Shown here piece by piece: positions 47,885 through 51,677 of a stretch of 64,000 bases of DNA (position 1 is the first letter of the stretch; every line of letters starts with the position of its first letter). The notes beneath the pieces were generated by a model, which had not been told where the DNA came from, made no database searches, and saw nothing but the letters and a program-made list of their open reading frames with translations. The translations under genes and the position numbers were made by a program. The DNA is from Mytilus californianus (Eukaryota): the NCBI RefSeq assembly GCF_021869535.1, contig NW_026262581.1:2852001-2916000 (forward strand), given 5' to 3'.

Positions 47885-50302
47885 AATTATCATCACGACG
47901 AAATATACTTATTAACTTATTGTAAGACCTGACACATTGTAATGTGAACAAATTAGAATTGGATGTATCTATATCAAATGCAGTTATCAGTGCTGTTCAG
48001 TGTTGATATATCAATTAACAATGACTGCTGAGCGCCACTGTGTACAGATTTCATAAAGGGGGGCCTATATAATCAACCAAGGGGAGGGGCGGCCCCCAGC
48101 CCCCCTTTTGGATCCGCCTGGGGTGTACAACGACTCCAAAGAATAAATCATCATGTACGAGTACATTAAACTGTCTACCCCACATTCGAACATCATTTGG
48201 GACCTCGCTGTGTTGCAAGTATCTTGGGTTTTCAGGCATATTAATTCAAATTGCTCATTGCTGCCTTTTTTAATTTCATCTATCTATAGTCGTAGACGTC
48301 CAGCTAGAGGGGTCAAACAAACTATAGTGCACTGAAACCCTTGCCCATAACTAAACCGTGATGCTTGGTGTTTGCTTCCTTGCACACACGCAACCATGTT
48401 ACTCACCTTGTTTGTTTTCTATTCTTCTAATCAGCTGTTTATCGGCAATTGTCTGTTTTGTTTACATCAGAAATCAATGAAGCGGTGAATGCGCGGGGAA
48501 ACGAAAGGACATCTTCGTATCAATACGGTAAATTCCGTGATTTGAATATTTTCTAATCAATATGTTAAGGCAAAGAAAAATAGTAGGATAACATTTTTAA
48601 TCATAGAGCACACGTTTTGTGTATTTACTTTTTAAAATTATAGTTTATGAAGAAATATAGCAAAATATGTTTCAATACGCACTATAAAGTGAAGATTAGA
48701 TGTATTATTGTTTCGTTTTTGAAAGAACATTATTATCCATAAATACACACCTTTGTACCAAAATTGCAACACAATTTCAAGATAACATAAATTTCATCAT
48801 CACAGAATGATATTATTTGCTCAAATTGACAGGGCTTCGTGAACTAAATTTGGCTTAAATTATGATAGCAATTGAACACTTCATTATAGTTCCTACCGAT
48901 GACCTACTATCATGATTTTTATCCGACCCCAGTTACGGACGCGTTGACATATAATGCATACAACTCAATAATAGCCAATCAGACGTTAAGATATCCTTCA
49001 CTTCCCCCAGAAGCAGCCCGGAAGCAGCTGAGATGCAGCCATTTTATGTTATTTATAACCAATGAGATACCGTTAACAGATTTACCACATTCCAGACGTC
49101 CAGCCTCTGACTAATCAGACCGTATCACCATGGTGATACGGTAATTAAGAGTTTAATGAACTCGGTTAAACAAAACAAAATTGTTTGTGTGTTACGACTT
49201 CTTTTTTTACAGATTATAATAATTGTGGAGCTTAAAAGATATAATGAATATCTTTAATTAAAAACAAATAGCCACAAACATTTTTTTTTGTAAATGCAAA
49301 TAGTACTCAGTTTGGATACTGAAGATAAATATCGATGGACTCCTTTGAAAAATATTCCTCATAAAGCTGTTAAAAGAATTGATTTTCATTACCATCCCCG
49401 GGAACAATATTTTGAATAAAATAAAATGAAAATGTGTATTGAAACAACCATATTGTGATTTGGTAGCAATATGGGGCGAGTATCAGTGAGGCGAGTTGTC
49501 CTACTTACAGAGTGTTCTCTAGGAGGTCCGCGTTATTGTTGTCAAAGTTATTGGAGTGTTTTTAGCAGTGCAAATTCAAGCGCTGAAATGTAACCGATCT
49601 GGTTTGTTTTCCTAATCGACCGACACAACTTGGACCAATCTGAGACTACTATAACACAGTCTCAGGACCAATATAATGTATTAGTCACAGGACACAAGTA
49701 TGAAAATTGTACTGAGATCGCTAAACAATCGAAACAGTTGATAATCTGACTTAGCTTACAGAGGTATGTATATGACATGTCATAACAACGAATAGAGTAA
49801 TTTTCATCCACATGCCATATCATAAAGATTATCATTACTGTTTCTTTACTTATATGTCTATATGTAACATGCCCTTTATGGGCCGATGATTAGTTTATTG
49901 AATTATTCATGTATTCGTAAAAAGGCCATACTGACATGACTGAGGTGCCAGTATAGATAATTATGAAATCCTGAAAGGCTTATTATTCACGTAGGAAGGC
50001 GTCACAGCAAAAAAGTATAATAGCCTTTCATACATGTAGCCTTTCAAGACTTTATGCACAAGTTTTCTTAAGATCATGTATTTGTAATTTGAACATTCAT
50101 GAACATGATGTATGGCATATAAATAAGATTTACTTACTTACTAGGCTGCCTCCATTTGCTATTGTCAGTGCCACAGGTTATCATAAAATATGCACCAAAA
50201 ATCAGTTGAATTACATCACAGAAACCTATATTGGTGTACAATATATTGCTTTATATTCAGGTGTTACATGCTAAAGTTTGTGGTTGTAAATTATCATTTA
50301 TA

Positions 50303-50766
50303 TGTAACTGGAGAGCATGAATTTCATTACAAAATTGCTTGTCTCCACCGGGACTCGAACCCGGGACCTCTGTGTTGTAAGGAGGCGTGTATACTGACTG
50401 AGCTAAAGAAGTACTTCCTTAGCTCAACTGCTTACGGCTGACTAGTATCTACCACATTTACTAAGGGAAGAAATCCCGTTACACTTCCCCCACCTCAAGA
50501 GTCATCATACCATTATGACTCTCACACACATACCCTAGCTAGAATTCCTCTCTAACCACCATGGGTTTTTTAGTTGGGTGCCAAATGTAACCGGAGAGCA
50601 TGAACTTCATTACAAAATTGCTTGTCTCCACCGGGACTGGAACCCTGGACCTCTGTGTTACAAGGCAGCTCGTATACCAACTGAGCTAAAACAGTACTTC
50701 CTTAGCTCAACCGCTTACGGCTGACTAGTATCTACCACATTTACTAAGGGAAGCAATCCCGTCACA
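50303..50766 (-). mobile_element. TRIM (miniature LTR retrotransposon) with tRNA-derived Pol III boxes in both LTRs
   Basis: Two 181-bp direct repeats (50303-50483, 50586-50766) with TGT..ACA ends. On -, PBS TGGCACCCAAC lies 2 nt after the 5' LTR and PPT GAGGTGGGGGAAG abuts the 3' LTR. Internal region 102 bp. TATA TSD at 50299-50302 and 50767-50770. Confidence 0.88.
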
Positions 50767-51677
50767 TATACATAACTACAGATTTTTGTAACCCACTACA
50801 AATCTTTACCTAAGGATTAAATATAAATAAGAGGCTCATAGGAGCCTTATTTGCTCAAGAGTAAATTTCAGAAACTTTTGACAAATTTTAAAGCTATAGA
50901 TAACTTTGTTTTCAGCAATCTCCTTAAGTTTCAAAACATTTGGCCATGTAGTTTTAGACAAGATATTTGCCAAGTCAGAATCAAAAATTCTCTTTGTGAC
51001 TATGCTTTTCATTCCTTCATATAATAGGACCTATACATCATTCCTACAACCTTTGGGTAATTTGACTAGTAATGTCAAGAAAAGGATGACATTGTCATTT
51101 AACATAAACATGGTAAGGTTTCAATGGGAACCAACATTTATTGAGTATCAAAGAGAGTCTGTCAATTTTCAAACCTCTTACCATAAGTTTTAAACATGTT
51201 AAAACGTTTTGCAATGTAGTTTCAGAGATATAGATTACAAGTAAAAATTCAATTATACACTGTAACCTTTACAGTTATCCTTTGGTGGCAAAAGAAGAAT
51301 AATTATGTTTTAGAATTATTTGTCTCTGGTGACATACAAATTCTGGATTGTCATGCTTTCTCAGCACTAGTTGATTTATCACTGTCATTGATTACTGACC
51401 TAATACAGTTGTGACAAGGATTAGTTAAAAAAATGGAAAAAGTAATGTTTAATGTAAATGATAATGTATAAGTACATATCAGCAAGTTAAGCTTGGCAAT
51501 TAAAATTTATCTTTCAAGTTGGCATTCATTTACTTTGAAAGAAATACACACTGTTACTTTTTTAAACATAGCTTCTATGTTCAAGAAGGTTGTGATAACA
51601 TAAGAATTTCCATAAATTTGTTCTTATGTGCTTTCCCATGCTACAGTTTTATTCTTTGAAACTACATTTGTAATGTG

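What the first reader, a model, noticed from the sequence alone, without database searches (positions are those of the whole stretch)
50303..50766. Animal TRIM whose LTRs carry a tRNA-derived Pol III promoter (a tRNA analogue of plant Cassandra)
Seen: a complete miniature LTR retrotransposon on -. It has two 181-bp LTRs with TG..CA ends, a PBS (TGGCACCCAAC, 10/11 match to the 3' end of tRNA-Lys(CUU)), a PPT abutting the 3' LTR, 102 bp of non-coding internal DNA and a 4-bp TATA TSD. Each LTR contains, in element-sense orientation, a consensus A box (TAGCTCAGTCAG 50405-50394; TAGCTCAGTTGG 50688-50677) and a B box (GGTTCGAGTCC 50361-50351; one mismatch in the other LTR). There is an intact T-arm in one LTR, a D-stem in the other, and a CTTGTAA loop resembling tRNA-Thr(UGU). 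The A box is one arm of a 28-bp near-perfect palindrome, and a T4 tract follows the tRNA unit. The LTRs differ at 17/181 positions, about half clustered in the D/anticodon region. Established: TRIMs are known in bivalves, and plant Cassandra TRIMs carry 5S rRNA Pol III promoters in their LTRs. Inference: this may be a SINE-LTR hybrid that uses Pol III for transcription and an LTR/Gypsy partner for mobility. I do not know of a described animal example, but cannot check.
Basis: partly seen in the sequence, partly recalled or inferred. Interest (0 to 1): 0.85.

Follow-up and report, generated by a model that had tools for sequence, protein, structure and literature searches.

The report
Known mussel Helenus TRIM copy
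This is a real but old, decayed copy of a miniature LTR retrotransposon whose repeats carry a tRNA-like Pol III promoter module; the class (Helenus) and this very mussel family (Helenus-1_MyCo) were already published in 2024, so it is ordinary.

Summary
On the minus strand there are two 181-bp TG..CA LTRs, 91% identical. There is a tRNA-Lys(CUU) PBS, a PPT, a 102-bp non-coding core and a TATA target duplication. Each LTR holds a tRNA-like unit with A box, B box and a T4 tract.

It is not new. Kojima 2024 (PMC10886601) named tRNA-bearing TRIMs 'Helenus'. He listed 51 families in pteriomorph bivalves, with 4-bp TSDs, Lys PBSs and tRNA-Thr-like units. His Helenus-1_MyCo consensus (LTR 182, core 102) matches this element at about 91-97%, compared by eye.

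This 1.65-Gb genome holds hundreds of copies:
- at least 704 candidate places and 273 exact LTR ends;
- 20 of 24 simple copies have 4-bp TSDs of varied sequence;
- some copies have identical LTRs, and tandem arrays occur.

The tRNA-like unit is not a tRNA gene (ARAGORN found none; Rfam gave at most 21.5 bits against a threshold of 29). Pol III transcription remains inferred; one RNA-seq run gave no usable reads. No autonomous partner was identified, although Gypsy elements with a Lys PBS and 4-bp TSDs exist here.

One side observation may be undescribed: a conserved 16-22-bp hairpin that buries the A box. Two other first-stage notes of this scan (s1-312311, s1-287979) flag the same kind of element elsewhere in this genome.

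The parts
50767..50770 (-). Upstream copy of the 4-bp target-site duplication (TATA)
   Evidence: 4-bp TSDs of varied sequence occur in 20 of 24 other simple copies.
50586..50766 (-). 5' LTR, 181 bp, TGTGAC...GTTACA
   Evidence: By eye it differs at about 13 of 182 positions from the published Helenus-1_MyCo-LTR consensus.
50682..50709 (-). Palindrome/hairpin in the 5' LTR; its 3' arm holds the A box (weakened here by two substitutions)
   Evidence: -15.1 kcal/mol, z -2.4; family-wide.
50677..50688 (-). A box of the tRNA-like unit in the 5' LTR (TAGCTCAGTTGG)
   Evidence: alignment of 54 LTRs.
50634..50644 (-). B box in the 5' LTR with one mismatch (GGTTCCAGTCC)
50614..50617 (-). T4 tract after the tRNA-like unit in the 5' LTR (candidate Pol III terminator)
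   Evidence: ATTTTG is kept in nearly all copies and in the Helenus-2-like family.
50573..50583 (-). [quoted passage not shown]
   Evidence: tRNA-Lys(CTT) genes of this genome.
50484..50585 (-). Internal region, 102 bp, too short to hold gag or pol. RNA folding predicts two stem-loops in it.
   Evidence: By eye it differs at 3 of 102 positions, plus one extra T, from Helenus-1_MyCo-I.
50484..50496 (-). Polypurine tract GAGGTGGGGGAAG, abutting the 3' LTR
   Evidence: The exact 14-mer ending in this tract is kept in 23 of 32 listed units, and the others differ by one or two bases.
50303..50483 (-). 3' LTR, 181 bp, TGTAAC...GTTACA
50399..50426 (-). Palindrome/hairpin in the 3' LTR; its 3' arm holds the A box
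   Evidence: I1, 94% complementary; -19.4 kcal/mol, z -4.2.
50394..50405 (-). A box in the 3' LTR (TAGCTCAGTCAG)
50351..50361 (-). B box in the 3' LTR (GGTTCGAGTCC) within an intact T arm
   Evidence: One search gives a sub-threshold Rfam tRNA match at 50340-50398, 18.9 bits against a gathering score of 29.
50331..50334 (-). T4 tract in the 3' LTR (candidate terminator, the inferred end of R)
50299..50302 (-). Downstream copy of the target-site duplication (TATA)

Best explanation
The element is an old, inactive copy of the published non-autonomous LTR retrotransposon family Helenus-1 (Helenus-1_MyCo/MyGa lineage, Mytilidae; Kojima 2024). Shown here: it has the complete LTR-retroelement replication kit without any genes. 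[quoted passage not shown] It belongs to a family of hundreds of copies, some of them very recent. Inferred: copies are reverse-transcribed and integrated in trans by the RT and integrase of a Ty3/Gypsy element that also uses tRNA-Lys and makes 4-bp TSDs. Also inferred: the tRNA-like unit in the LTR is not a tRNA gene but an internal Pol III promoter (A and B boxes) followed by a T4 terminator. On that model R would run from a start about 11-20 nt upstream of the A box to the T4 tract (about 85-95 nt). U3 would be the first 55-70 nt of the LTR and U5 the last 28-32 nt. A replicating RNA would have to read through the T4 of the 5' LTR and stop at the T4 of the 3' LTR. The window copy has lost its CpGs, including the one in the PBS, and has damaged boxes, so it is a dead copy.
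For: The Helenus class is defined in Kojima 2024 as animal TRIMs with a tRNA-like LTR, 4-bp TSDs, Lys PBSs in bivalves and tRNA-Thr-like units in seven bivalve families. Table S1 lists Helenus-1_MyCo with LTR 182, internal 102, full length 466 and TSD 4. Its consensus agrees with the window element at about 91-93% in the LTRs and about 97% in the internal part, compared by eye. Family size: at least 704 candidates and 42 near-full-length matches; 273 exact LTR 3' 17-mers, 41 of them with an intact PBS junction. 4-bp TSDs occur in 20 of 24 simple copies. Tandem arrays are also flanked by TSDs. Two copies have identical LTRs. A contig in run X15 joins the flanks of L017 without the element. The primer exists: 43 tRNA-Lys(CTT) genes have the matching 3' end. 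Aberrant loci carry an LTR end followed by 17-18 nt copied from that tRNA. Between the two Helenus families of this genome, the hairpin/A-box block (70-81%), the B-box block (76%) and GATTTT are kept. The 5' U3 (40%), the anticodon part (52%) and the tail (26%) have diverged. Ty3/Gypsy elements with a Lys PBS, 4-bp TSDs and TGT...GTTACA ends are present.
Against: There is no direct evidence of Pol III transcription. The only true RNA-seq run (X21) gave 4 partial reads in 10.3 million records. Such libraries lose short non-polyadenylated RNA, so this neither supports nor refutes the model. Within the family the A and B boxes are not significantly better kept than other columns (non-CpG diversity 0.031 against 0.059, permutation p = 0.15). 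That is what neutral decay of dead copies predicts, but it gives no positive support. The T4 in the 5' LTR should stop Pol III before the PBS, so read-through has to be assumed. No autonomous partner shares LTR or internal sequence with the family. The identity to the published consensus was read by eye, not computed.
Confidence: 0.93

Rival explanations
1. It is the same Helenus TRIM, but the tRNA-like unit is not the element's promoter. Genomic RNA would be made by Pol II from U3 or by read-through. The conserved block would then be kept for another reason, such as an RNA or DNA structure used in strand transfer, dimerisation or packaging, or TFIIIC binding without transcription.
For: The A box lies inside a conserved 16-22-bp hairpin that keeps pairing through G-U and compensatory changes, so some constraint acts on structure and not only on box sequence. 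A T4 tract between the promoter and the PBS is awkward for Pol III. There is no Pol III evidence so far (Kojima's own caveat).
Against: A box, B box and a downstream T-run are kept together in many unrelated Helenus families and in the independent 5S-based Cassandra and Ajax elements. That is the signature of a Pol III unit. The small size of these elements fits Pol III. No Pol II signals were identified here.
Confidence: 0.2
2. It is a tandem duplication of a tRNA-derived SINE, or a short satellite unit, and not an LTR retroelement.
For: Tandem LTR-internal-LTR-internal-LTR arrays exist.
Against: TG..CA ends, a PBS matching a real tRNA-Lys, a PPT, and 4-bp TSDs of varied sequence in 20 of 24 dispersed copies. 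The arrays themselves carry outer TSDs (TATC, CTAC). There is no poly(A) or LINE-type tail.
Confidence: 0.01
3. The LTR units are working tRNA-Thr genes that the element spreads around the genome.
For: CTTGTAA anticodon-like loop. Kojima reports that seven bivalve Helenus families can be scored as tRNA-Thr.
Against: ARAGORN finds no tRNA in the window or in 28 loci with copies. The Rfam tRNA model reaches at most 21.5 bits against a gathering score of 29. There is no acceptor stem. The 5' acceptor strand pairs with an upstream arm instead.
Confidence: 0.02

Closest known systems
Helenus-1_MyCo (Mytilus coruscus), with Helenus-1_MyGa and Helenus-1B_MyGa (M. galloprovincialis); Kojima 2024, Biology 13:119, PMC10886601
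   Same: LTR 181-182 bp and internal 102 bp. Same TGTGACGGG...CTCCGGTTACA ends. Same PBS (TTGGCGCCCAAC), PPT (GAGGTGGGGGAAG), tRNA-Thr-like unit, T4 and 4-bp TSD. By eye about 91-93% (LTRs) and about 97% (internal) identity to the consensus.
   Different: Only decay: CpG losses (including the PBS), one 1-bp deletion per LTR, one extra T before the PBS. This genome also holds a 177-bp-LTR subfamily whose core begins like Helenus-1_MyGa, and LTR-end spacings of about 301 bp that suggest a longer-core form.
Cassandra (plant TRIM with 5S rRNA in its LTRs) and Ajax (nemertean TRIM with a 5S promoter); together 'TRIMp3'
   Same: A TRIM whose LTR carries a small-RNA-gene-derived Pol III promoter and terminator.
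   Different: The module here is tRNA-derived (type 2, A+B boxes), not 5S (type 1, A/IE/C). The TSD is 4 bp rather than 5 bp. The host is an animal. Pol III transcription is validated only for Cassandra.
biv-TRIM (Satovic et al. 2019, PMC6934838)
   Same: A TRIM of bivalves, with solo and tandem forms.
   Different: biv-TRIM has 202-218-bp terminal repeats, a 77-80-bp core, the PPT GGGGAGA, no recognisable PBS and no reported tRNA-like unit. It is a different family.
tRNA-derived SINEs (SINE2)
   Same: A degenerate tRNA head with A and B boxes acting as an internal Pol III promoter. This is the probable source of the LTR module.
   Different: SINEs have no LTRs, PBS or PPT, are moved by LINEs and end in a LINE-type tail or A-rich tract.

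Membership tests
Helenus (TRIM with tRNA-derived sequence in the LTR; Kojima 2024) | TRIM architecture: two short LTRs around a short non-coding core, total length well under 1.3 kb | tested here: met
   181 + 102 + 181 = 464 bp.
Helenus (TRIM with tRNA-derived sequence in the LTR; Kojima 2024) | tRNA-like sequence with box A (TRGCY..YGG) and box B (GGTTC) in each LTR | tested here: met
   sub-threshold Rfam tRNA match over the unit.
Helenus (TRIM with tRNA-derived sequence in the LTR; Kojima 2024) | PBS just after the 5' LTR and PPT just before the 3' LTR | tested here: met
   matching tRNA-Lys(CTT) genes in this genome.
Helenus (TRIM with tRNA-derived sequence in the LTR; Kojima 2024) | 4-bp TSD (animal Helenus) | tested here: met
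   TATA at the window copy; 20 of 24 simple copies have 4-bp TSDs of varied sequence.
Helenus-1_MyCo family (sequence family) | At least 80% identity over at least 80% of the published consensus | tested here: met
   Compared by eye with the consensus printed: about 13 and 16 differences in 182 (LTRs), and 3 in 102 plus one extra T (internal). This was not computed, because the consensus has no reference id and was not typed into a tool.
TRIMp3 (TRIM transcribed by Pol III) | Transcription starts from the internal Pol III promoter in the 5' LTR and ends in the 3' LTR | tested here: inconclusive
   One RNA-seq run gave 4 partial reads in 10.3 million records. No small-RNA, RACE or ChIP data were in reach.
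Cassandra | 5S rRNA-derived sequence in the LTR | tested here: not met
   The Rfam scan of the element gives only a weak tRNA match and no 5S match.
biv-TRIM | Terminal repeats of 202-218 bp, a 77-80-bp core, PPT GGGGAGA, no canonical PBS | tested here: not met
tRNA gene | Cloverleaf with acceptor stem, scoring above detection thresholds | tested here: not met
   ARAGORN finds none. Rfam RF00005 gives 18.9-21.5 bits against 29.
tRNA-derived SINE | No LTR, PBS or PPT; LINE-type 3' tail; variable TSD | tested here: not met

The most novel reading that the evidence does not exclude
The conserved palindromic hairpin has the A box and D-arm start of the tRNA-like unit as its 3' arm, and its apex is usually self-complementary. 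It may be a functional RNA element of bivalve Helenus TRIMs that has not been described. It could block the cloverleaf fold, so that RNase P and RNase Z do not cut the genomic RNA. Or it could act as a TAR/DIS-like stem-loop at the U3/R border for strand transfer, dimerisation or packaging by the Gypsy partner. Either role would mean the tRNA module was rebuilt for retroelement replication rather than merely borrowed as a promoter.
Probability: 0.35. Interest if true: 0.45.

Novelty: already known. Interest (0 to 1): 0.12.

Why it matters
As a discovery it does not matter much, because the class, the name and this family's consensus are in the literature (Kojima 2024). It is useful for annotation. 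Hundreds of tRNA-like units in this mussel genome are Helenus LTRs, not tRNA genes or SINEs. What remains open for the whole class could be tested in this genome, which has copies with identical LTRs. The open points are whether Pol III really makes the replicating RNA, how it passes the T4 of the 5' LTR, which Gypsy element supplies the proteins, and what the A-box hairpin does.

Tried and rejected
1. tRNA detection. ARAGORN on the window and 28 loci found nothing. Rfam at gathering threshold found nothing. Permissive scans gave at most 21.5 bits. The units are therefore not tRNA genes.

2. Within-family test of extra conservation of the A and B boxes on 54 LTRs: not significant (p = 0.15). 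I judge this test uninformative. The cross-family comparison is the relevant test.

3. Expression. The one real RNA-seq run (X21) gave 4 partial reads. Runs X1, X2 and X15 are contigs of uncertain kind and probably DNA. There is no verdict on transcription.

4. Autonomous partner. I searched for the pattern GTTACA + 1-3 nt + Lys PBS + S. It found three groups of long-LTR elements. The two representatives scanned with Pfam carry reverse transcriptase, RNase H and integrase domains, as Ty3/Gypsy elements do. The two complete ones have 1.3-1.5-kb LTRs. They share nothing with Helenus beyond TGT...GTTACA termini, the PBS type and TSD length. No partner can be named, and I built no consensus of these elements.

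5. A Helenus-3_MyGa-like family: no match even with 3 mismatches.

6. Solo LTRs. The ratio of 273 LTR ends to 41 intact PBS junctions can be explained by decay of the extra 11-13 bases. No excess of solo Helenus-1 LTRs can be claimed. Some Helenus-2-like LTRs stand without a core beside them and may be solo LTRs.

Identity figures to them, and the hairpin survey of about 14 published families, are by-eye readings.

Full report
**1. Observation**

- Two 181-bp direct repeats, 50766-50586 and 50483-50303, begin TG and end CA. They differ at 17 positions (91% identity), eight of them in the D/anticodon part.
- After the 5' repeat come TT and then TGGCACCCAAC (50583-50573).
- The purine run GAGGTGGGGGAAG (50496-50484) abuts the 3' repeat.
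- The core is 102 bp, and TATA flanks both ends.
- Each repeat holds TAGCTCAGT.. (A box), GGTTC.AGTCC (B box) and a T4 tract about 25 nt downstream of the B box.
- The A box is the 3' arm of a palindrome (repeat I1; -19.4 kcal/mol, z -4.2 in the 3' LTR).

**2. It is a repeat family with the marks of LTR-type integration**

The window's genome (1.65 Gb, 175 contigs) has at least 704 candidate places and 42 scored near-full-length matches at 85-100% identity. It also has 273 exact copies of the last 17 bases of the LTR, 41 of them followed by an intact PBS.

I examined the 30 fetched loci.
- 24 independent simple copies have the same LTR-core-LTR plan.
- 20 of them have perfect 4-bp duplications of varied sequence, such as ATAT, ACTT, CTTT, ACTG, GATT, GTAT, TCTG, GAGG, GTTG, CATG, CACT, GAAG, CATT and AATC.
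- Two LTR-core-LTR-core-LTR arrays are also bounded by 4-bp duplications (TATC, CTAC).
- Most copies carry TTGGCGCCCAAC, so the window's 10/11 PBS is a CpG-to-CpA decay.
- LTR-to-LTR identity ranges from 76% to 100%. L015 and L017 have identical LTRs, so the family moved recently. The window copy, at 91%, is an old one.
- A contig of run X15 joins the two flanks of L017 without the element. This fits a recent or polymorphic insertion, although the flanks differ by 2-7%.

**3. The primer**

The genome has a tandem array with 43 matches to this tRNA 3'-end sequence, spaced about 1.1 kb apart. ARAGORN calls tRNA-Lys(CTT) in the locus I sampled. The 3' end is ...GGTTCGAGCCCCACGTTGGGCG, to which CCA is added. 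Its complement is TGGCGCCCAACGTGGGGC.

Normal copies match 11 nt of this. A few aberrant loci (L031, L034 = L054) have a Helenus LTR end followed by 17-18 nt of it and then unrelated or inverted sequence. L037 shows the same thing for an unrelated LTR. Established knowledge of retroviral replication says that plus-strand strong-stop DNA copies the first 18 nt of the primer tRNA. I therefore read these loci as footprints of tRNA-Lys priming. That reading is an inference.

**4. The tRNA-like unit is not a tRNA gene**

ARAGORN finds none in the window or in 28 loci. The Rfam tRNA model gives 18.9-21.5 bits against a gathering score of 29, and nothing passes at gathering level. There is no acceptor stem. 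The unit is a SINE-like tRNA relic that keeps the boxes, the T arm and a CTTGTAA loop.

**5. Already described**

Kojima 2024 (Biology 13:119, PMC10886601) defined Helenus as TRIMs with a tRNA-derived sequence in the LTR.
- They occur in fungi, one plant and six animal phyla.
- He lists 51 families in pteriomorph bivalves, including Mytilus galloprovincialis, M. coruscus, Modiolus, Gigantidas and Limnoperna.
- Animal families make 4-bp TSDs.
- Bivalve families use tRNA-Lys, His, Ile, Pro, Glu or Ser as primer.
- Seven bivalve families score as tRNA-Thr.
- He proposes origin by SINE insertion into a TRIM LTR, mobilisation by Gypsy elements, and the collective name TRIMp3 together with Cassandra and Ajax.

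Table S1 lists Helenus-1_MyCo with LTR 182, core 102, total 466 and TSD 4. I compared its consensus with the window element by eye.
- The core differs at three positions (two are CpG decays, one is a 1-bp deletion), plus one extra T.
- The 5' LTR differs at about 13 of 182 positions and the 3' LTR at about 16 of 182.

I did not type the consensus into a tool, because it has no reference id. These figures are therefore by-eye counts.

Two other first-stage notes of this scan (s1-312311, s1-287979) flag the same kind of element elsewhere in this genome. I did not examine those copies.

**6. Is the promoter under selection?**

Within the family, the boxes are not significantly better kept than other columns. 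Non-CpG diversity is 0.031 against 0.059, with permutation p = 0.15 on 54 LTRs. The variable patches are LTR positions 21-30 and 141-160. This test mostly measures neutral decay of dead copies, so it says little either way.

Between families it is different. A second family, Helenus-2_MyGa-like, is present here with 25 exact B-box matches and a complete copy in L059. I aligned its LTR with a young Helenus-1 LTR.

| LTR segment | Identity |
|---|---|
| Hairpin 5' arm | 70% |
| Hairpin 3' arm with A box | 81% |
| B-box block | 76% |
| 5' part of U3 | 40% |
| Anticodon part | 52% |
| Tail | 26% |

GATTTT is also kept. This agrees with Kojima's Figure 2 and supports a Pol III unit made of promoter plus terminator.

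**7. Mechanism**

Shown:
- The element is a gene-less LTR retroelement.
- It has a tRNA-Lys PBS, a PPT and 4-bp TSDs.
- It is multicopy and recently mobile.

Inferred:
- Replication in trans by a Ty3/Gypsy element.
- Pol III initiation about 11-20 nt upstream of the A box.
- Termination at the T4 of the 3' LTR after read-through of the T4 in the 5' LTR. This gives an R of about 85-95 nt.

The only real RNA-seq run in reach (X21, raw reads) laid 4 partial reads out of 10.3 million records. Standard libraries lose such RNAs, so this is no verdict.

I then looked for a partner. I searched for LTR ends ...GTTACA followed by a Lys PBS that continues unlike the TRIM. This gave three groups of long-LTR elements.
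- The two complete representatives, L052 and L053, carry reverse transcriptase, RNase H and integrase domains, as Ty3/Gypsy elements do. L053 also has a protease domain.
- Their LTRs are 1.3-1.5 kb and their TSDs are 4 bp (CTTA, CGTG).
- Their termini are TGT...GTTACA.
- Neither the LTRs nor the regions next to PBS and PPT resemble Helenus-1.

The class of partner fits, but no partner is identified. I only described these copies and built no consensus.

**8. A side observation that may be new**

Its 3' arm is the 5' acceptor strand plus the A box and D-arm start (L017: -22.1 kcal/mol, z -4.0).

It is present in the Helenus-2-like family with a different sequence. An alignment of ten copies from the two families gives a 16-pair consensus stem. 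One pair is compensatory (G-C to A-U, involving the variable base of the A box). Five pairs are changed on one side to or from G-U. The wobbles are all G in the 5' arm against U in the 3' arm, which points to the sense strand.

I also read the published consensus sequences by eye. About 14 bivalve families from oysters, pen shells, pearl oysters, scallops and mussels have an equivalent stem. The apical sequence differs between them (GTAC, TCGA, GATC, TTAA, AATT, ACGT, CATG ...) but is usually self-complementary. Families with an intact acceptor stem lack the stem. Kojima's text does not mention a palindrome, hairpin or inverted repeat.

Possible roles are preventing the cloverleaf fold and hence RNase P/Z cutting, or acting as a TAR/DIS-like stem-loop at the U3/R border. 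This is hypothesis only.

The core also folds into two stem-loops, one just 5' of the PPT. One compensatory G-C to A-U change separates subfamilies. By eye, analogous stems occur before the PPT in many published families.

**9. Verdict**

The element is one decayed copy among hundreds. Interest is low. The hairpin deserves a small follow-up.

Noticed in passing
window 50399-50426 and 50682-50709 (-); L017:1545-1595; L059:1418-1475: A conserved 16-22-bp hairpin has the A box as its 3' arm. It is kept between the Helenus-1 and Helenus-2-like families through G-U and one compensatory change. By eye it is present, with different and mostly self-complementary apices, in about 14 published bivalve Helenus consensus sequences. 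The 2024 paper does not mention it.
   Followed up: partly
window 50484-50585 (-); L017:1678-1779: The 102-bp core folds into two stem-loops, one immediately 5' of the PPT (GAGAGTCAT...ATGACTCTT). One G-C to A-U compensatory change separates subfamilies. By eye, similar pre-PPT stems occur in many published Helenus cores. It may be a packaging signal.
   Followed up: partly
L031:1400-1740; L054:1850-2040 (= L034); L037: Aberrant structures: an LTR 3' end followed by 17-18 nt copied from tRNA-Lys (TGGCGCCCAACGTGGGG.) instead of the usual 11-nt PBS, and then either unrelated DNA or an inverted second LTR joined head-to-head at the PBS. They look like integrated strong-stop or aborted reverse-transcription products.
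   Followed up: partly
G000:C110:103753502-103812030 (L063-L065): [quoted passage not shown] In the sampled locus the Lys genes alternate with tRNA-Arg(TCG) genes.
   Followed up: partly
L052 (G000:C57:3190541-3200540) and L053 (G000:C165:46447232-46457231): Two complete LTR retrotransposons, about 7.3 kb and 9.1 kb, with 99-99.6% identical LTRs of 1.3-1.5 kb, a tRNA-Lys PBS, 4-bp TSDs and Ty3/Gypsy-type RT, RNase H and integrase domains. They look young, and L053 has the longer open frames. They fit the expected class of Helenus partner, but no specific link was found.
   Followed up: partly
L055-L062 (e.g. L059:1398-1541): A second Helenus family, Helenus-2_MyGa-like with a 144-bp LTR, is present, with a complete copy (L059). 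Several of its LTRs stand without a core beside them and may be solo LTRs.
   Followed up: partly
L054:1-552: A 46-bp tandem repeat array of at least 8 units lies about 1.3 kb upstream of a truncated Helenus-like LTR.
   Followed up: no
L017:3363-3424 (-): A near-threshold Rfam SECIS_1 match (34.7 bits against a gathering score of 35) lies in the flank of a Helenus copy. It is probably chance or the 3' UTR of a selenoprotein gene.
   Followed up: no
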